64,000 nucleotides of DNA from Caecitellus pseudoparvulus (taxonomy: Eukaryota; Protista; Bigyra: Bicosoecida): positions 1 through 64,000 of the forward strand of contig CBFFRQ010000065.1 of NCBI GenBank assembly GCA_965644315.1, in the 5' to 3' direction. Below the pieces are notes generated by a model. That model was not told the origin of the DNA. It ran no database searches and saw only the letters and a list, made by a program, of their open reading frames with translations. A program made the translations under genes and the position numbers. Below are positions 51,688-59,301 of the stretch, piece by piece (within the stretch, counting starts at the first letter, position 1; the number at the start of each line of letters is the position of its first letter).

Positions 51688-52532
51688 TCACTCCAGGGGC
51701 ACAGAGCGAGTGGGAGAGACGGCACCCTCGGTCTTGGGCAGCGTCAGGTGCAGCTGGCCGTCTTGCACCTTTCCGCGGATGGCCTCCGGGTCCACGTTGG
51801 GAGGCAAACGCAGCACCCGGCGCACGGCACCCGAGTGCCGCTCGATGCGGCGCCACTTGGGACTGCCACCCTCCCCGCCTGTGAAAGAAGGAGAATACAG
51901 TGTGTGTATGATATTTGCCCGATGCAATGCTTCGCCGGTCGCTGCCCTGCAGGGCGGGACGCCGCACGCACCTCCGCTCTCGTCCTTGCCGCCCTGCGCA
52001 GTTGCTTCGATGACCAGGGAGCCGTCCTGCACGTCCACCTTCACTTGGTCTTTGGGGACGCCAGGCACGTCAGCCACGATCTCGAATGCATGGTCGGTTT
52101 CTGCGGTGGGGCGCAGCGTGGCGGTGTGCGACATTCGGCGGGGTGGCGGTGGAAAGTTCCAGCGCAGGCACAATTGCCGCCTCGGCACGCACCCTTCACG
52201 TCCAGCGACAGGGCGCGGGGGCCACGCAGGGCATGGCCAAAGAAACCAAGTTCCTGTCCCGTTCCACTTGCGTCCCCTCCCTGCCCCGCCGGCACGACGT
52301 GCTGCCCGTCACTGTGCTCGCCAGTGATGCCGGAGTGATGGGCTTCTCCTGAGCCGGGCGCGTCTTCCAGCCGCTCCACGGTCGGAGACCGGGCCGAAGT
52401 GCCACGAAGGAGTGCGAAGGGGTCCCCCATGAACGGGTCTGCAGCCAGGCTGCGGTGCATGGCGTGCATGTCAGCCATCATGGCGTCCATGTGGCGAGCC
52501 ATGGCAGCGAAGGGTGAGATGTGGCGGGCCAT
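51688..52532 (-). CDS. Small heat-shock protein (HSP20/alpha-crystallin), 3 exons
   Basis: LDVK|ETDHAFEIVADVPGVPKDQVKVDV..WRRIERHSGAVRRVLRLPPNVD..DGQLHLTLPK. Confidence 0.92.
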
Positions 52533-52649
52533 GTCAGCGTGCTGAAGCTTAGATAGCAGTGTCCACTGATGGTTGGGAGTTGCTTGAAGTGTGTGTGTTG
52601 CGTGTAGGCTGTGTGTAGCGTGCGTAGGGGTGATTCAGAGCAGTTTGTA

Positions 52650-53513
52650 ATGTGTCCCTGTCGTGGGTCTGCACTGGACGAGGACCCCCCCCCCCCATGC
52701 GAGGGAGGGGGGCACGTGGAGGCACACCTGCTGCGCCAGCTGGCCAACACAATCCCACCAGCAGCCCCCAGACAGCGAGCAGTCCATGCAGCGCCCATGC
52801 ACCAGTTGCTCAAGCAGCACAGAGCCAGCGTGGCGAGCGCCAACGGTAGCATGGACGGTTTTGGCATTGTGGGAACCGGCGTAGGCCGTGCGCAGGCACA
52901 TGCTTCGTCTCAAAGGGGAGGACCGACATCAGGCAGAACATCAGGCCGGCGCGTGGGCAGTGGAAGCGCCCTGCGAGCTGCCGCGGCGTCGTCGCTGGGG
53001 GGGGGCTCGGCGCGGAATTTGGTCGGTGCGCGACGTCGTGCAGGACCTGGCACCAGCGCCCCCAGAGCCAGTGGTCCCCCTTCGGCAGTGCCCACTGCAC
53101 CACCGCCATCACACATGCAGGGTAGTCGCGTTCCTTCCCAGTCAGGGGCCGCCGTTCCTGCCGCTGCCGCTGCAGCACCAGCCGGCGCTGCATCCAGCAC
53201 GAGCGTCGGGCACACGGGGCGCACACCCGGCACAGACCCCGTCCCCGGTGCCGTCGCGCGGAAGGCAACTGGCATGGCACGTGCATCGGCGTGGAGTAGC
53301 GAGGTGGAGAACAATTTCCGGCTGCAGGAGGTGGGGTGGCGCGACTTGGAAGAGTACCGCGTGGCGCACGGCGAGCCTGAGCGGTGGAAGGCGTCGGGGT
53401 TCATCGCCGTGCTCAAGAGCAAGGGCTCTGGCAACTACATTTACTTCGACCGTGCCCGGGAGTGCGAGGACAAATTCGTGCACCGAGTGAAGCTCTACAC
53501 CTACGCAAGCTGA
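52650..53513 (+). CDS. MEIG1: MEIG1-domain protein with a long low-complexity N-terminal extension (start uncertain)
   Basis: C-terminal WSSEVENNFRLQEVGWRD..EY..PERW..GFIAVL..YFDRARECEDKFVHRVKLYTY is the MEIG1 signature. Confidence 0.85.
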   Translation: MCPCRGSALDEDPPPPCEGGGHVEAHLLRQLANTIPPAAPRQRAVHAAPMHQLLKQHRASVASANGSMDGFGIVGTGVGRAQAHASSQRGGPTSGRTSGRRVGSGSALRAAAASSLGGGSARNLVGARRRAGPGTSAPRASGPPSAVPTAPPPSHMQGSRVPSQSGAAVPAAAAAAPAGAASSTSVGHTGRTPGTDPVPGAVARKATGMARASAWSSEVENNFRLQEVGWRDLEEYRVAHGEPERWKASGFIAVLKSKGSGNYIYFDRARECEDKFVHRVKLYTYAS

Positions 53514-53524
53514 TGGCTGGGGTG

Positions 53525-54635
53525 TCACTTGCCCTGGCCGCCTTTCTTCTTGGCGTTTCCCCGCCGTGTGGCCTTGCGGGAGGCCTTGCCGCCCCCCTTG
53601 CGAGGCGTGCTGTCTGTGGCGCTGGGCGGCGCCGGCGTGGCGGGCAGGCCCCCCGCCTGCAGTGCTGCGATGAACCTGGAATGCAGCTCGTGCAGAAAGT
53701 CCGGCTCGTCCAGCATGCCCACCAGCACGTCACGCAGCGCAGCCTTGGACAGGGCCAGGGGTGTGGGCGTGGGCGTGCCCTCCTCCTCTGCCACCCGCCT
53801 GGCCGCCGCATCCGCCATGCTCTGGGCCATGGAGGAGGAGGGTGTGCCGGAGGGGGGGGCGCTGCTGCGCCCACCTCCTGCACCACCAGGCGTGGCTGCA
53901 GAGTGGCTGGCAGCTTGCAGGAGGGACATGACGCTGGAGTGAGGCGTGGTGGGTGTGCTGGGGGGAGTGGGCCCAGGCTTGGCAGGCGTCATGGCTGGGG
54001 AGGCGCCGTCCCCCCGCAGGCTGCGGCAGTGGCTCTTGATGTGCTGGCGCAGGGTCCGGAGGTCGTGGGGGTGGTAGGACCAGAAACCACACACCGCCTG
54101 CGCAGGCAAGGAGGCGTGCGGGTGGGGCGTCGCTGGGAGGTGCGGGGGCGCCATCACGTACACCCTCGGCCGTCCTCAGCGACAGCATGTCATCTTGCAA
54201 GGTGGAGGAGGTACTGGCCTCCACGTCGAACTTCAAGTTCGTCGGACTCAGGCGATTCAACAAGATCAAGCGCATGGTGGGGGCCTCATACCTGCGCAGG
54301 AGGTGCCAGGGCCATGCAGGTACACGAGGCAGCGGCGTGCCACGGGCGTTTCACTCACCGCTGCACCAGGAAGAGCGGGCCCTCGATAGGCCGTTGTTCC
54401 TGCAAAGGCAGCGCAGGGGGTCGGCGTGACACTTGTGCAATTTACACCACTGCCTGAATCAGGCATGGCTACCCACCCATTCGCCCTTCTGGCAGTCGAA
54501 CTCGTACGCCTTGGTGTGCCGGGCCACAGCAACGATGCTCTCCACTGCTCGGTCCACACGAGACGTGAGCACCGCAAGGTTGATGGCAGCCGCCTTCTCC
54601 TGATCAAAGGTGATCAGCTCTCCCTCCTGGGCCAT
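53525..54635 (-). CDS. DCP1: mRNA-decapping activator DCP1 (EVH1 domain plus C-terminal trimerisation helix), multi-exon
   Basis: INLAVL..YEFD..W / IEGPLFLVQR / RLILLNRLS..NL / VCGFW EVH1 motifs; C-terminal LSKAALRDVLVGMLDEPDFLHELH. Confidence 0.85.
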
Positions 54636-54820
54636 GTCGCACTTCGACGAGGCTCAGGCGTGGGACAGGCGGACTGGGCGTAAGTGGGCGCTGGTGCTGG
54701 GCAGCTCTATGCCGGCGAGCCACGCGAGTGAGCGGCACAGTACCGCGATGCTCGGGAGAGGCCTGGCGCAAACAGGCGGTGGTGCATTGCAATGTTGGCC
54801 GTGCCGTTCACTGCCCGCGC

Positions 54821-56505
54821 TCAGGCGTGCGCACCCCCCTGCGCCGGCACACAGGCGTCCCACAGCGCGTCAAAGGCAGCCTGGTACTCCCGCACAGCCA
54901 TGGGGTCCCGCACCACCAGCACGTTCTCGGCGTTGCCATGGTGGGCCTGCTGGGTCCAGTTGTAGCTGCCCGTGGCCAGGAGGCGCCCATCCACGACGGC
55001 AAACTTGTGGTGCATGTGGTAGGTGGGGGAGGCATCCAGGCGGGTGGGGATACCGCTGGCCGCCAGGCGCAGGATGTCACTGCCGCGGGACTTGGCCTGC
55101 TCGTCGTCGGAGATGAGGCGCACCGCCACGCCCCGCCCCGCCGCCGCTGCGATGGCGTCAGCGATGGCGTTGTCGGTGATGCTGAACACGGCGATGTCCA
55201 GGGAGGTCACGGCGCGGCGCAGCAGGCGCAGAAGCCGGGCGTGGGCGCCAGGGCTGGGGAAGAACAGGCACTGCGTCTCCCCTCCGCTGCTCCCCCCCTG
55301 TGCGCCTCTCTCCGCCGCTGCAGCCACGGCAGGGTGTGCCGTTATCGCTGAAGCCTCCACGCTGGCCACTGCGGCGGTCGCTTGGGCGAGCCACTCCTGG
55401 GCAGGTGCCAGGGCGGGGGCTGTGCCCTCTGTCGCCAAGGCCGCCATGCACCGCCGGTGATGCGCTGCGTACGCGTCCCCGATGGCGCCCAGCAGCACTG
55501 ACGTGGTGGAGGGCGTGATGCCGCCTGCGTGGGGGGCCAGGGCGCCAGTGATGTCCCCAGGCGACACCAGGGTGCCGTCGGCCAGCTGGGCCACCAGTCC
55601 ATGCACCGCTTCCAGTGCGCCCTTCTGCAGGTCTAGCGCTGGCATGACTGTGGGCGTGGGGGAGGCTGGCCCATCCGCTGCCTCCCCCGCCACCTGCACC
55701 TGCGGACGGCGCCACGTGAGGGCAGCCTCACTGCCCAGGAAGCTGCGCACCTTGTCTTGCACCTGGGAGACGGCTGCTGTGGGCATGTGGAACGCCACGT
55801 CCACATTCCCCACCCGCCCCTTGTCTCCGCGTGGCACGTCAAAGTCGGCGCCGAGCGCGTGCAGTTCTCGTGCGTTGGCGCCGCCCCGCCCGATCAAGGA
55901 GCCCACGGCCGAGGCAGGCATGGTGAGCGTGAAGAAAGAGGCGCCAAAGGCATCCTTGACGCCCCACAAGGCGTCTGCCAGGGCAGACAGTGCAGGGGCC
56001 AGCGCTGTCCCAGGACCAGTCACCACCAAGGCTCCAAACACCGTGTCTTCAGCGGGGTCGTCCTGTGAGAACTGCGCAGTCAGCCCATCAAGAGCAGCCA
56101 GGCTAGACACAGCGGCTTCACACGACGCGAACGTCGGCTGTGCGCCAATGGAGGTGCTCAGTTGCACGGAGAGCGTGTCGTGACAAGGCACCACAGCACA
56201 CACCACGCCGACGACTGCGGCAGCACAGGCCTGGGGCGCCCCAGCCACCCACACGACTGGCCCATGTCCTCCCTGCCCTTCCTTATCTACGTTGATGCTG
56301 CAGCCAGACTTTTCCTGCAGCTCGCGGATCGTGGCGCCTTCTGCGGCGGCGGTTGGTGAGAGCAGTTGCCGCAAATCGGCGCCTGCAAGCTGTGAAGGGC
56401 AGACTCACTCTTGCCGATAACTCGCCCCACCAGGCCCCCCGGCACCCGCACCGCCCATCGCTCTCGAGGCCCAAGCAGGGACGAGCTGTCTGCCGAAGCT
56501 GCCAT
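54821..56505 (-). CDS. KH-domain / PLD-superfamily (Zucchini/PLD6/Nuc-like) nuclease fusion protein, 2 exons
   Basis: Intron 56408-56341 restores KH1 (VPGGLVGRVIGKKGATIRELQEKSGCSINV). A second intact KH reads MPASAVGSLIGRGGANAREL. The C-terminal single-HKD domain reads SLDIAVFSIT..RGVAVRLISD..HMHHKFAVVD..TGSYNWT..NAEN. Confidence 0.88.
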
Positions 56506-56585
56506 GGTGCTGCTCGCTGTTGTGCAGAGGCGCGGCGCAGTGACAGTGGTGACTTGGGAAGTGAATTGCCGCCACGCGCTGCACG

Positions 56586-57560
56586 TCAACGCGACGCCAT
56601 GCCGTCCAGGGCCGCAGTGACGCTCTCCCCAACAAGCGGGCTCGCACCACCCACAGCCGATGCATCTGCCCGGTCCCCCCCGTACGCCGCTGCCTTGGCG
56701 GCAGCACCGCCCTTCTCGCTGGCTGGGTCAGGCGTCAAGCTCGTGAACCGCAGGCGAGGGTGCAGCTTGGAGTGGTAAGGCAGCAGGTTCAGGGAACGAG
56801 CGCGCTTGATGGTGCGGGCCATGGCGCGCTGGTGCTTGGCACACAGCTTGGTCAGGCGCTTGGGCAGGATGGTGCCGTTGTCAGCCACGAACTGGGACAG
56901 CAGCGTGGAGTTGTCCACTCGCAGCATGTCCGTGCCGTGGTGGCAGCAGATGCAGTACTGCACTGGCAGCTCCGCCTGCTCGCTGGCAGCCGCCACACTG
57001 CCGTCCTGCATCTTGGCGTACTCCCTGAACAACATGCGCAGGCGAGGCTCAGAGACGGAGTAGGGTGCCTCCACGCTCCTGTGACAGAGATGGGCGGGGA
57101 TGGGAGACGAGTGCAGCCCGGCAACCCTGCACATGCGGCGCCCGAGGTACGTACGCAAAGCGTGCTTCTTCCCGCCGCCAGCGCTGGAAGGCGTTGTCAG
57201 CTGCGTTGGCGCCGACTGGACGTGCGCCGCGCCTGCCTCGCCTGGCCCTGTCCTCACTCTTGCGGTACGGCGCGTCACTGCGCAGGGCAGCTGCACCGGA
57301 GCCGCCAGCGATGAACACATCCTCGTCGTCTCCTGGCACGAGGTCCTCAGGGTCTGGCCCGGCAGCGTCGCCGTTGCTGGCGACAGAGGCGTCTGTGGAG
57401 CACCACGCGAGGCCGGGGCGGAATTTGGCCGGAACCACACGGCGCTGTGCTGTGAGCGCCACGCGGATGAGGGAGCCTGCGAGGAGGGGTTGAGAACTGT
57501 GTGTGGCTGAAGGGATGCCCTGTATGAACAACGTCCTGCGCACGCACGGGCTGTGTGCAT
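56586..57560 (-). CDS. MRPS18: Mitochondrial ribosomal protein S18 (bS18m), multi-exon
   Basis: CICC..N..LLSQFV...G.ILPKR.TKLCAKHQR.MARTIKRARSLNLLPY, with an Arg-rich N-terminus resembling a mitochondrial presequence. Confidence 0.85.
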   Translation of the reverse strand: MHTARACAGRCSYRASLQPHTVLNPSSQAPSSAWRSQHSAVWFRPNSAPASRGAPQTPLSPATATLPGQTLRTSCQETTRMCSSLAAPVQLPCAVTRRTARVRTGPGEAGAAHVQSAPTQLTTPSSAGGGKKHALRTYLGRRMCRVAGLHSSPIPAHLCHRSVEAPYSVSEPRLRMLFREYAKMQDGSVAAASEQAELPVQYCICCHHGTDMLRVDNSTLLSQFVADNGTILPKRLTKLCAKHQRAMARTIKRARSLNLLPYHSKLHPRLRFTSLTPDPASEKGGAAAKAAAYGGDRADASAVGGASPLVGESVTAALDGMASR

Positions 57561-58063
57561 GGTGTCGGGGAGGAGCCGGGAGTACGGTGTGCGGAATTGG
57601 CACGGTGTCCGCTGGACAGAGGCGACTTCCTGCAGTGGATAGGTGCCGGAAGAGCACAACCTGGGAGTCAGGAAGTGCTGAGTGTTCAAAAATGTTCCCA
57701 GGTGGCGGCTGGGGTCTTGGTTTGTGACTCGGGTGACAGCAGTGCACTGTCGCGGCGCACGTGCGTGCATGCCAAGAGTCCACCTGTCGAGCTACATGTA
57801 GGCCAGCAGCCACTGTCTCAGGCAGTCGTCACCCGACTGCATTTGCACCCCTTGTCCCCCATGTCGGCCGATCTGCCGCCCAGGCCCACCCTAGTCTTGG
57901 TGCCAGCACTCCCTACCGCATTGCGCAGTTTGTCCGCAGCAACACTTCCCACTCCACACCCAACGCCTCCAAGCGCACGCTCCAGCGGCCCGCAGTCTTC
58001 CAGCCCCAACTCGGCGAGTAAGCCGCTGCTTTGCGTCGCACTCGTTGCCGCAGCGCTCCCAGC

Positions 58064-59301
58064 ATGGCCGCCGCCAGCCCCGTCGAGGGGTCTGCCCCCC
58101 TCATCCACCTGGCCCTGCCCAAGGGACACATGAAGGACAACGTCTTCAAGCTCATGGAGGAGGCTGGCATGAAGGTGAAGTTGGGCAACGACCGGGCGTA
58201 CCGCCCCAGCATCTCTGTCCCCGGCTACGACGTCAAGTTGCTGAAGGTGAGAATCTCCACGCACCACAGCGCGCTCCGGGGTGTGACGTGCACCCCCTGC
58301 TCCTCGCCACTTGCCGTGCGCAGCCCCAGAACATCTTGGGACTGCTGAAAACTGGAGCTCGTGATCTTGGCTTTGCCGGCCTGGACTGGGCCACCGAGCT
58401 GGGCCTCACAGGGGACGTGGTGGAGGTGTGTCAGTTGTTTGCGGGTTCACTGCGGATTTTGATGCCGCACCCCACTGCAATGCCCCACCCAACGGCGCCG
58501 TCTGGCATGGCATGCTTGTGGGCACCCCTGAACTTGCATCTCTGCCCGCGCACAGCTCATGGACACCAAGTTGGACCCTGTGCGCATTGTCGCTGCCGCA
58601 CCCACAGAGGACATGCTGACAAAGGGCAAGGGCCTGGGCGGCCGCAAGCTGGTGGTGGCGTCCGAGTACGAGGGCATCTGCCGGGCATGGATTGAGAAGA
58701 AGGGCCTGGATGTGAGTGCACAGGCGCCGTCACGCGTGCTGCGGGGTCGCCCCCCCGCGTTACGCGCCGGGGGCCGGCGCTGCGGTGCTGCCCGTGACTT
58801 GCGGAATATTGCACCCTTGCACCGTTTCCCACCTGGCAGGCGGAATTCCTCCGCGCATACGGCGCCACCGAGTCCCTGCCCCCTGAGGACGCCGACTGCA
58901 TCGTGGACAACACCGCCACTGGCTCCACCCTGCGAGCCAACAACCTGCACATCCTGGAAACCATCACGCGCTCCTCCACCCGCCTCTTCGCCTCCAAGCA
59001 GGCACTGGCTGACCCCGAGAAGAAGGCTGCCATCGACACCTTTGTCCTGCTGCTGCAGAGCGTCCTGGACGCCCGGGCCCGCTCCCTGCTCAACTTCAAC
59101 GTCGCAGCAGACAAGCTGGAGGAGGTACTGGAGGGCCTGCCTTCCATGCGTGCCCCCACCGTCACCCAGCTGAGGGGTGCGGAGGGCTTCGCCGTGTCCA
59201 CGGCCGTGCCCACCGGCGATGTGCCGGGCCTGGTGCCGGTGCTCAAGGCCCACGGCGCGACGGACATCCTCGTTCTGCCCATCCAGCAGCTGGTGGCGTG
59301 A
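58064..59301 (+). CDS. HIS1: ATP phosphoribosyltransferase, long form (histidine biosynthesis), 4 exons
   Basis: LALPKG, DLGFAGLDW, VASEY, YGATESLPPEDADCIVDNTATGSTLRANNL, and the C-terminal regulatory domain LPSMRAPTV..LKAHGATDILV. Confidence 0.95.

What the first reader, a model, noticed from the sequence alone, without database searches (positions are those of the whole stretch)
54821..56505. KH RNA-binding domains fused to a Zucchini/PLD6-type nuclease, directly upstream of DCP1
Seen in sequence: after removing one 68-nt intron, the protein has a KH domain with an intact GKKG loop, a probable degenerate KH, a KH with an intact GRGG loop, a helical linker, and a single-HKD PLD domain with complete catalytic motifs (HHKFAVVD, TGSYNWT, NxEN). 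It lacks the N-terminal TM anchor of animal mitoPLD. Established: single-HKD enzymes (bacterial Nuc, animal Zucchini/PLD6) act as dimeric nucleases or cardiolipin hydrolases, and in animal piRNA biogenesis Zucchini works alongside a separate Tudor-KH protein (Papi/TDRKH). Inference: this is a self-targeting RNA endonuclease in which the KH domains select the substrate, possibly part of an undescribed small-RNA, mRNA-decay or antiviral pathway in a protist. I do not recall this domain architecture being described. The gene ends only ~185 bp before the DCP1 start on the same strand.
Basis: partly seen in the sequence, partly recalled or inferred. Interest (0 to 1): 0.85.

Follow-up and report, generated by a model that had tools for sequence, protein, structure and literature searches.

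The report
KH-domain-fused Zucchini-like nuclease gene
This protist gene joins RNA-gripping KH domains to the same type of cutting enzyme that animals use to make piRNAs; the fusion is real and conserved, and it also occurs, unstudied, in many other single-celled eukaryotes.

Summary
A two-exon gene lies on the minus strand at 54821-56505. Its 68-nt GT-AG intron (56341-56408) sits inside the first KH GxxG loop. It encodes KH, a degenerate KH-like module, KH (GRGG), a 5-helix insert, and one HKD PLD domain. Pfam gives PLDc_2 E 3.5e-29 and KH_1 E 3.7e-12. The best solved relatives are mammalian PLD6/Zucchini (E 3e-26), ahead of bacterial Nuc. The catalytic motif is complete. There is no N-terminal anchor, and the ~25-residue insert of mammalian PLD6 is absent. 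Four orthologous contigs keep the intron position and phase. All domains show pN well below pS.

The novelty claim is only partly right. This long form has just two 50%-identity clusters among 1.84 billion representatives. A shorter colinear KH-KH-PLD form (~320 aa) occurs in Thecamonas (annotated "phospholipase D6"), Emiliania, Filamoeba, Vexillifera, Lacrimia and dozens of environmental contigs. I found no paper describing it.

DCP1 adjacency is kept within this small clade, together with S18 and MEIG1, but not in Thecamonas.

The most likely function is a soluble, dimeric single-stranded nucleic-acid endonuclease, probably acting on RNA, positioned by its KH domains. This is inferred, not shown. 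No RNA reads could be obtained.

The parts
56409..56505 (-). Exon 1: ATG at 56505, 32 codons plus 1 base. A short N-terminus without a hydrophobic anchor, then KH1 strand 1 and the first half of the GxxG loop.
   Evidence: Sequence. Exon-1 peptide and donor GTGAGT. Orthologous exon 1 in L001, L009 and L010.
56341..56408 (-). 68-nt GT-AG intron, phase 1, inside the third codon of the KH1 GxxG loop.
   Evidence: Same position and phase in L001 (101 nt), L009 and L010.
54821..56340 (-). Exon 2, including the stop TGA at 54821-54823. One uninterrupted frame from KH1 helix 2 to the end of the PLD domain.
   Evidence: ORF 54821-56374. Pfam. pN far below pS in all regions among orthologues.
56192..56457 (-). 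KH1 (type I), with a G-K-K-G loop split by the intron.
   Evidence: KH_1 stretch at residues 2-43 of the exon-2 piece. AF2 elements H2-12, E15-19, E29-33, H36-50.
55964..56176 (-). Middle beta-alpha-beta-beta-alpha module without GxxG; a likely degenerate KH.
   Evidence: AF2 secondary structure E56-65, H70-82, E88-93, E101-110, H111-126. Its tail aligns to KH1 of the short family. No Pfam hit of its own.
55736..55942 (-). KH (type I) with an invariant G-x-G-G loop (G-R-G-G, 55880-55891).
   Evidence: Second KH_1 stretch. Invariant G151, G153, G154. Aligns to KH2 of the short family. dN/dS about 0.06.
55298..55645 (-). Clade-specific five-helix insert between the KH modules and the PLD domain.
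   Evidence: Model m3c26aa102d02, pLDDT 81. No PDB or Atlas match. Absent from the short family. dN/dS about 0.19.
55250..55270 (-). C-L-F-F-P-S-P motif, shared with the E-A/V-LFFPS of mammalian PLD6 and with all KH-PLD proteins.
   Evidence: Invariant C358-P364. Seen in A2. Seen in the human and mouse PLD6 chains.
54842..55252 (-). Single-HKD PLD domain of the PLD6/Zucchini-Nuc branch.
   Evidence: PLDc_2 E 3.5e-29. PDB 9lkx E 3.3e-26, 4ggj E 1e-24, 1byr E 2.8e-13. Foldseek top hits are Zucchini.
54959..55012 (-). Catalytic HxK(x)4D(x)6GSxN motif (H444 to N461).
   Evidence: Read. Invariant in the family.
54923..54934 (-). N-x-E-N motif (N470 to N473).
   Evidence: Invariant N470, E472, N473.
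53528..54635 (-). Neighbour (context): a DCP1-like gene whose ATG lies 185 nt after the stop.
   Evidence: The DCP1 Pfam profile matches exon 1 at 22.3 bits, E 1.3e-4, positions 3-39. The L001 orthologue covers profile positions 3-116 over two exons. Synteny.
56586..57122 (-). Neighbour (context): a ribosomal protein S18 gene ending 80 nt before the ATG.
   Evidence: Ribosomal_S18 E 9.3e-17. Upstream in all orthologous contigs.

Best explanation
The gene encodes a soluble member of the PLD6/Zucchini-Nuc branch of single-HKD phosphodiesterases, with its own nucleic-acid-binding arm.

Proposed mechanism:
- As in Nuc and Zucchini, two PLD domains must pair to form one active site. In that site a histidine attacks the phosphodiester and leaves a 5'-phosphate end (established for Nuc and Zucchini; inferred here).
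- Each subunit adds two intact type I KH domains plus a degenerate one. These would hold single-stranded RNA, or possibly ssDNA, and feed it across the catalytic groove.
- The KH domains would thereby replace the membrane anchor, the zinc-finger insert and the separate helper proteins that animal Zucchini relies on.
- The clade-specific five-helix insert probably sets the spacing between the KH arm and the nuclease, or adds a partner or dimer contact.

The gene is a long variant of a KH-KH-PLD family spread across protist supergroups. The cellular pathway (RNA decay, RNA processing or small-RNA biogenesis) is not known.
For: Shown:
- Domain calls: PLDc_2 E 3.5e-29 and KH_1 x2.
- The nearest solved sequences and folds are mammalian and fly PLD6/Zucchini, then Nuc and NucT.
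- The nearest curated bacterial families are all nucleases (NucT, DrmC, DpdK), not lipid synthases, though all score far below their cut-offs.
- The catalytic motif and the GxxG loops are intact and invariant.
- There is no anchor in exon 1.
- There is purifying selection on the KH, helical and PLD parts.
- One colinear profile alignment (probability 100) links it to the short KH-KH-PLD family.
- A tree holding all KH-bearing members as one clade is not rejected and scores better than the free tree (p-AU 0.66).
- The fusion recurs in Thecamonas, Emiliania, Filamoeba, Vexillifera and Lacrimia, including single transcripts in transcriptome sets.
- This is the only strong single-HKD PLDc_2 gene in the 30.6-Mb genome.

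Established knowledge: Nuc and Zucchini are dimeric nucleases. KH type I domains bind about 4 nt of single-stranded nucleic acid through the GxxG loop.
Against: - No activity, binding or localisation data exist for any member.
- PLD6 has also been reported to hydrolyse cardiolipin.
- KH domains can bind ssDNA.
- The AF2 full-length model is only moderate (pLDDT 64, five sequences), and no dimer was modelled.
- The PLD domain is 48-57% identical to ~230-aa bacterial proteins but only 40-47% identical to the short KH-PLD proteins. Its place inside the KH-bearing clade therefore rests on the KH region, the colinearity and a non-rejecting AU test, not on a resolved tree.
Confidence: 0.6

Rival explanations
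1. It is a DNA nuclease rather than an RNA nuclease. It would be a Nuc-like enzyme whose KH domains hold single-stranded DNA, for example in repair, recombination or degradation of foreign DNA.
For: - Nuc and NucT are among the structural and sequence matches.
- The closest sequences by identity are bacterial ~230-aa proteins, some annotated 'endonuclease'.
- Some KH proteins matched here (FUSE-binding protein, PCBP, hnRNP K) bind ssDNA.
Against: - The best solved relatives are the RNA-cleaving PLD6/Zucchini, by a margin of about 40 bits over Nuc.
- The tandem type I KH arrays matched (IMP1 KH34, vigilin, PCBP) are mainly RNA binders.
- No nuclear or organellar targeting signal is evident in exon 1.
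Confidence: 0.15
2. It is a lipid phosphodiesterase (a cardiolipin or other phospholipid hydrolase, like the original MitoPLD model). The KH domains would tether it to RNA granules or to mRNAs.
For: PLD6 was first described as a cardiolipin hydrolase. Databases name the Thecamonas and Emiliania members that way.
Against: - There is no membrane anchor or amphipathic N-terminus.
- The fusion to nucleic-acid-binding domains is conserved across supergroups.
- The nearest curated families are nucleases.
Confidence: 0.1
3. The PLD domain is a non-catalytic scaffold, as in FAM83/SACK1 pseudo-PLD domains, and the protein is simply a KH RNA-binding protein.
For: There are weak SACK1 Pfam hits over the same region (E 0.0047). 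FAM83 structures appear low in the fold list.
Against: Every catalytic residue of the HKD motif is present and invariant in the long family. PLD dN/dS is 0.07-0.10.
Confidence: 0.03
4. The model is wrong: the KH and PLD parts are separate genes, or the long frame is a GC-rich artefact.
For: - There are no RNA reads for this locus.
- An automated NCBI model of a 95% identical copy uses other splice sites (P0002).
- GC-rich DNA gives many long spurious frames.
Against: - A single 517-codon frame spans the KH, helical and PLD parts.
- Orthologues at 40% identity keep it whole.
- The intron position is conserved.
- pN is far below pS throughout.
- Short-family members occur as single transcripts.
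Confidence: 0.03

Closest known systems
Animal Zucchini / PLD6 (MitoPLD)
   Same: - Single HKD domain.
- About 45% identity over ~137 residues to the human and mouse enzymes (E 3e-26).
- Top fold match.
- Shared LFFPS motif before the core.
- Complete catalytic motif.
   Different: - No N-terminal transmembrane anchor.
- It lacks the ~25-residue segment that lies between LFFPS and the core in mammals. From the literature, that segment carries the zinc finger.
- It carries three KH-type modules and a helical insert in the same chain.
Protist KH-KH-PLD proteins (~320 aa; Thecamonas trahens 'phospholipase D6', Emiliania huxleyi EMIHUDRAFT_117229, Filamoeba, Vexillifera and Lacrimia transcripts); uncharacterised
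   Same: - Colinear KH - KH - LFFP - PLD layout; hhalign probability 100 with 36% identity.
- Intact GxxG and HKD motifs.
- A single clade of all KH-bearing members is not rejected.
   Different: - The window's family has an extra N-terminal KH.
- Its KH1 equivalent has lost GxxG.
- It has a ~115-residue helical insert that the short forms lack.
- Its PLD domain is only 40-47% identical to theirs.
Bacterial Nuc / NucT and the ~230-aa PLD-like 'endonuclease' proteins of Myxococcota, Planctomycetota and Acidobacteriota
   Same: - Single HKD nuclease-type domain.
- 48-57% identity to the ~230-aa proteins.
- Nuc E 2.8e-13 and NucT E 7.7e-9.
   Different: - The bacterial proteins have no KH domains.
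- NucT family scores are far below the equivalog cut-offs (61 vs 297 bits).
- This is a eukaryotic, intron-bearing gene.
Papi / TDRKH (KH-KH-Tudor partner of Zucchini in animals)
   Same: Tandem type I KH domains acting beside a Zucchini-type nuclease. Here that is an analogy of function only.
   Different: - The TDRKH KH structure matches only at E 0.58, while IMP1, PCBP and vigilin match better.
- There is no Tudor domain and no anchor.

Membership tests
PLD superfamily, single-HKD nuclease branch (Nuc/Zucchini/PLD6) | One HxK(x)4D(x)6GSxN motif per chain. | tested here: met
   H444-x-K446, D451, G458-S459-x-N461, all invariant. PLDc_2 full length, E 3.5e-29.
PLD superfamily, single-HKD nuclease branch (Nuc/Zucchini/PLD6) | Nearest relatives are nucleases rather than lipid synthases or two-HKD lipases. 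| tested here: met
   PDB ranking is PLD6/Zucchini, then Nuc, then NucT. NCBIfam gives NucT, DrmC and DpdK only.
PLD superfamily, single-HKD nuclease branch (Nuc/Zucchini/PLD6) | Homodimer forming one active site; endonuclease activity leaving a 5'-phosphate. | not testable with these tools
   Needs a multimer model, biochemistry or a structure.
Animal Zucchini/PLD6 proper | N-terminal transmembrane helix anchoring the enzyme to the outer mitochondrial membrane. | tested here: not met
   Exon 1 (33 aa) has no hydrophobic stretch and starts KH1 after about 16 residues. The same holds in the orthologues.
Animal Zucchini/PLD6 proper | Insert carrying the zinc-finger motif between the LFFPS motif and the catalytic core. 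| tested here: not met
   The human and mouse chains have about 28 residues between LFFPS and the core. The window has about 3. That this segment is the zinc finger is from the literature and was not tested.
Animal Zucchini/PLD6 proper | Role in PIWI-linked small-RNA 5'-end formation. | not testable with these tools
   The genome has one PAZ-Piwi frame whose best PDB matches are PIWI-clade, but these are weak (E 1e-7). No small-RNA data exist.
KH type I domain | beta-alpha-alpha-beta-beta-alpha fold with a GxxG loop between the two helices. | tested here: met
   Two KH_1 stretches. GKKG lies across the splice junction and GRGG is invariant. The AF2 topology agrees. The middle module lacks GxxG.
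Protist KH-KH-PLD family (unnamed) | Colinear KH - KH - (E)xLFFP - PLD6-like domain in one chain. | tested here: met
   hhalign probability 100 over 270 columns. AU test p 0.66 for one clade.
DCP1 (neighbour gene) | EVH1-type Dcp1 domain. | tested here: inconclusive
   Window exon 1 scores 22.3 bits against a cut-off of 22.5. The L001 orthologue's two exons cover profile positions 3-116, at 16.6 and 21.6 bits.

The most novel reading that the evidence does not exclude
KH-KH-PLD6 is the ancestral eukaryotic form of Zucchini, an RNA endonuclease that aims itself. Animals later moved the nuclease onto the mitochondrial membrane and handed RNA binding to separate KH proteins. In this protist the enzyme would work with the genome's single PIWI-like Argonaute to make Dicer-independent small RNAs, or would feed decapping-dependent mRNA decay.
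Probability: 0.12. Interest if true: 0.85.

Novelty: new variant of a known kind. Interest (0 to 1): 0.55.

Why it matters
Whether PLD6/Zucchini is at root a lipase or an RNA nuclease was long debated, and the animal enzyme needs a membrane and many helpers. Here the nearest non-animal relatives of PLD6 are covalently joined to tandem KH domains, and this recurs across several eukaryotic supergroups. That is 'Rosetta stone' evidence that nucleic acid is the family's old substrate. These soluble, anchor-free proteins could be easier to study biochemically than Zucchini. They also mark an RNA-cutting pathway in protists that nobody has examined. The window's own clade adds an unexplained helical domain and a third KH module.

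Tried and rejected
I did not try another route.
2. Helical insert.
   - Its HMM found nothing among 288 PLD relatives.
   - The upstream extensions in some full-profile alignments had poor posterior support.
   - The Atlas feature search, Foldseek PDB and Atlas fold search gave only generic helical bundles.
3. TDRKH/Papi kinship of the KH domains was rejected (E 0.58, against 1e-4 to 1e-7 for IMP1, PCBP and vigilin).
4. DCP1 linkage as a general rule was rejected. Thecamonas and another long-form locus have unrelated neighbours.
5. PLD-only trees (FastTree and IQ-TREE quick) did not place the long family inside the short KH group. Only the constrained search and the AU test did.
6. No Rfam family or tRNA lies in 52000-59000.
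7. Six literature searches found no description of the fusion. A 2025 Dictyostelium PLD paper states that there is no clear PLD6 orthologue there (PMC12242099).
8. The organism could not be named with these tools.
9. The joined spliced protein was deliberately not built or searched.

Full report
**Gene model**

The feature is a minus-strand gene. The first in-frame ATG is at 56505. Exon 1 runs to 56409. A 68-nt intron (56408-56341) has the donor GTGAGT and the acceptor CAG. Exon 2 runs from 56340 to the TGA stop at 54823-54821.

Splicing puts the two halves of a KH loop together as G-K-K-G followed by ATIRELQEKSG, which is a textbook type I KH. The intron is phase 1, inside the third codon of the loop.

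In the orthologous contigs L001, L009 and L010, an intron of about 100-110 nt sits at exactly the same codon and phase. There the loop reads G-S-R-G, with GT(G/A)AGT donors and CAG acceptors.

An automated NCBI model of a 95% identical copy (CAE7331077, labelled Symbiodinium sp. KB8) uses other splice sites and breaks this loop.

I handled the two exons separately by reference. 

**Domains**

Residue numbers below count along exon 2.

- Pfam on exon 2 gives PLDc_2 at E 3.5e-29 (full model) and KH_1 at E 3.7e-12 with two stretches.
- The AF2 model (506 aa, five-sequence alignment, mean pLDDT 64) gives this order:

| Part | Residues | Note |
|---|---|---|
| KH1 | starts in exon 1, then 2-50 | type I KH; GKKG loop split by the intron |
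| Middle module | 56-126 | beta-alpha-beta-beta-alpha, no GxxG |
| KH | 134-202 | full beta-alpha-alpha-beta-beta-alpha, loop G-R-G-G |
| Linker | about 206-232 | disordered |
| Helical segment | 233-348 | |
| PLD fold | 364-496 | |

- The catalytic signature HxK(x)4D(x)6GSxN and the downstream N-x-E-N are complete. They are invariant in the five-sequence family alignment, as is the second KH loop.
- Exon 1 has no hydrophobic segment, so there is no membrane anchor.
- Among the orthologues L001, L009 and L010, non-synonymous change is far below synonymous change everywhere. Where synonymous sites are not saturated, dN/dS is about 0.07-0.10 for PLD, 0.06 for the GRGG KH, 0.19 for the helical segment and 0.3 for the middle module.
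- The long frame is therefore coding throughout and under purifying selection as one protein.

**Which PLD**

Against solved structures by sequence:

| Match | E-value |
|---|---|
| Mammalian PLD6/MitoPLD | 3.3e-26 and 1e-24 (about 45% identity over ~137 residues) |
| Fly Zucchini | about 5e-22 |
| Salmonella Nuc | 2.8e-13 |
| Helicobacter NucT | 7.7e-9 |

- Foldseek ranks Zucchini first, then Nuc and NucT. It also picks up IMP1 KH34 for the N-terminal part.
- NCBIfam returns only nuclease families (NucT, DISARM DrmC, DpdK), all far below their cut-offs. No lipid synthase appears.
- The protein shares the motif (E)xLFFPS with human and mouse PLD6. The mammalian chains have about 28 residues between that motif and the core, while the window has about three. 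By published structures (my knowledge, not tested here) that mammalian segment carries the zinc finger.
- The closest sequences of all are ~230-aa single-domain proteins from Myxococcota, Planctomycetota and Acidobacteriota MAGs, at 48-57% identity. Some are annotated 'endonuclease' or 'cardiolipin hydrolase'.
- The domain therefore belongs to the PLD6/Zucchini-Nuc branch. It fails two features of animal Zucchini proper: the anchor and the insert.

**How common is the architecture**

- An exhaustive HMM search of 1.84 billion representatives with the full-length profile found only two 50%-identity clusters that match end to end. One is the window's own and the other is the P0003 group.
- The next hits are two-HKD proteins, some with HhH domains and none with KH.
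- Lower in the same list sit ~320-aa proteins with two KH_1 domains and one PLDc_2. A profile of eight of them retrieved dozens more.
- The named members are:
  - Thecamonas trahens (annotated 'phospholipase D6', UniRef 'mitochondrial cardiolipin hydrolase');
  - Emiliania huxleyi EMIHUDRAFT_117229;
  - Filamoeba sp.;
  - Vexillifera abyssalis;
  - Lacrimia lanifica.
- Several of these come from transcriptome sets, so they occur as single transcripts.
- Profile-profile comparison gives one colinear alignment (probability 100, 270 columns, 36% identity):
  - the tail of the window's middle module aligns to the tail of short-family KH1;
  - the GRGG KH aligns to KH2;
  - the helical segment is an insertion;
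  - LFFP plus PLD align throughout.
- PLD-only trees are poorly resolved.
- A search constrained to keep all 50 KH-bearing sequences together found a tree 14 log-likelihood units better than the free quick search. The AU test does not reject it (p 0.66).
- A single origin of the fusion is therefore compatible with the data but not proven.
- I found no paper describing KH-PLD6 fusions. A 2025 survey of Dictyostelium PLDs reports no clear PLD6 orthologue there (PMC12242099).

**The helical insert**

- Folded alone, it gives a confident five-helix bundle (pLDDT 81, with the core above 90).
- It has no sequence relatives outside the clade.
- It has no significant PDB or Atlas fold match.
- Its role is unknown. 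A spacer, a partner-binding surface or an added dimer contact are guesses.

**Neighbourhood**

- On the same strand, a ribosomal protein S18 gene ends 80 nt before the ATG.
- A DCP1-like gene starts 185 nt after the stop.
- MEIG1 follows.
- The order S18, KH-PLD, DCP1, MEIG1 is kept in all four orthologous contigs, while genes further out differ.
- In Thecamonas, and at another long-form locus, the neighbours are unrelated.
- The DCP1 adjacency is thus a clade-level block shared with two unrelated genes, not a general signature. It is weak evidence for a decapping link.
- No RNA gene lies in 52000-59000.

**Genome context**

- G000 is 30.6 Mb in 215 contigs.
- This is its only strong single-HKD PLDc_2 gene.
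- It has one PAZ-Piwi frame (Piwi E 3e-14). Its PDB matches above threshold are all PIWI-clade, but weak (E about 1e-7).
- It has a clear cellular RdRP (E 3e-44).
- It has a weak RNase III match in an 1816-aa frame.
- Small-RNA machinery therefore exists, but nothing ties it to this gene.
- Other agents' notes call the organism a marine heterotrophic stramenopile-like protist. I did not verify that.

**Mechanism and verdict**

- Shown: the gene, its domains, its intact catalytic and RNA-binding motifs, its selection, and its family.
- Inferred:
  - it dimerises like Nuc and Zucchini to form one active site;
  - it cuts single-stranded nucleic acid, most likely RNA;
  - the KH arm supplies substrate binding that animal Zucchini obtains from its membrane platform and partners.
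- I put this explanation at about 0.6. The rivals are a DNA-nuclease reading (0.15), a lipid-hydrolase reading (0.1), and small odds for a scaffold or a wrong gene model.
Its interpretation is partly supported: the fusion is not unique to this organism, and the DCP1 and TDRKH links are weak. The family as a whole appears uncharacterised, and this clade is a distinct long variant.

Noticed in passing
window 56506-56585 and 54636-54820: Three same-strand genes (S18, KH-PLD, DCP1-like) are separated by only 80 and 185 nt. The promoter and 5'UTR of each downstream gene must therefore overlap the 3' end of the gene before it. The block S18, KH-PLD, DCP1, MEIG1 is kept in four diverged contigs.
   Followed up: partly
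P0002 (CAE7331077.1, 'Symbiodinium sp. KB8'), 8.9-kb contig: A 95% identical copy is deposited under a dinoflagellate name, although the gene belongs to a small GC-rich protist genome. It is probably culture contamination in that assembly. Its automated gene model also mis-splices the KH1 loop and removes 22 residues after the second KH.
   Followed up: no
P0182 (354 aa, 'MAG: ... [archaeon]', 5.8-kb contig): A KH + PLDc_2 protein 62% identical to a eukaryote-type member is filed under an archaeal MAG. This is either a misbinned eukaryotic contig or a transfer.
   Followed up: no
G000:C41:129337-129717 (L008 58-2109): This is the genome's only detected Argonaute-family frame (PAZ + Piwi). It matches only PIWI-clade structures in the PDB, and weakly. 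A cellular RdRP lies at G000:C73:60724-62292, and an RNase III-like match lies in an 1816-aa frame at G000:C67:331159-331338.
   Followed up: partly
P0136 (Lacrimia lanifica, 383 aa): This diplonemid KH-PLD member has a ~60-residue proline-rich N-terminal extension that starts M-G-C. That looks like an N-myristoylation/palmitoylation signal and may be an alternative way of membrane attachment.
   Followed up: no
P0293-P0404: A large set of ~225-235-aa single-HKD proteins from Myxococcota, Planctomycetota and Acidobacteriota is 48-57% identical to this eukaryotic PLD domain. That is closer than animal PLD6 and bears on the bacterial ancestry of the PLD6 family.
   Followed up: partly
G000:C53:474494-475465: A two-HKD PLDc_2 gene lies in a 437-aa frame. 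It is the only other clear PLD-family gene found in the genome. It was not examined.
   Followed up: no
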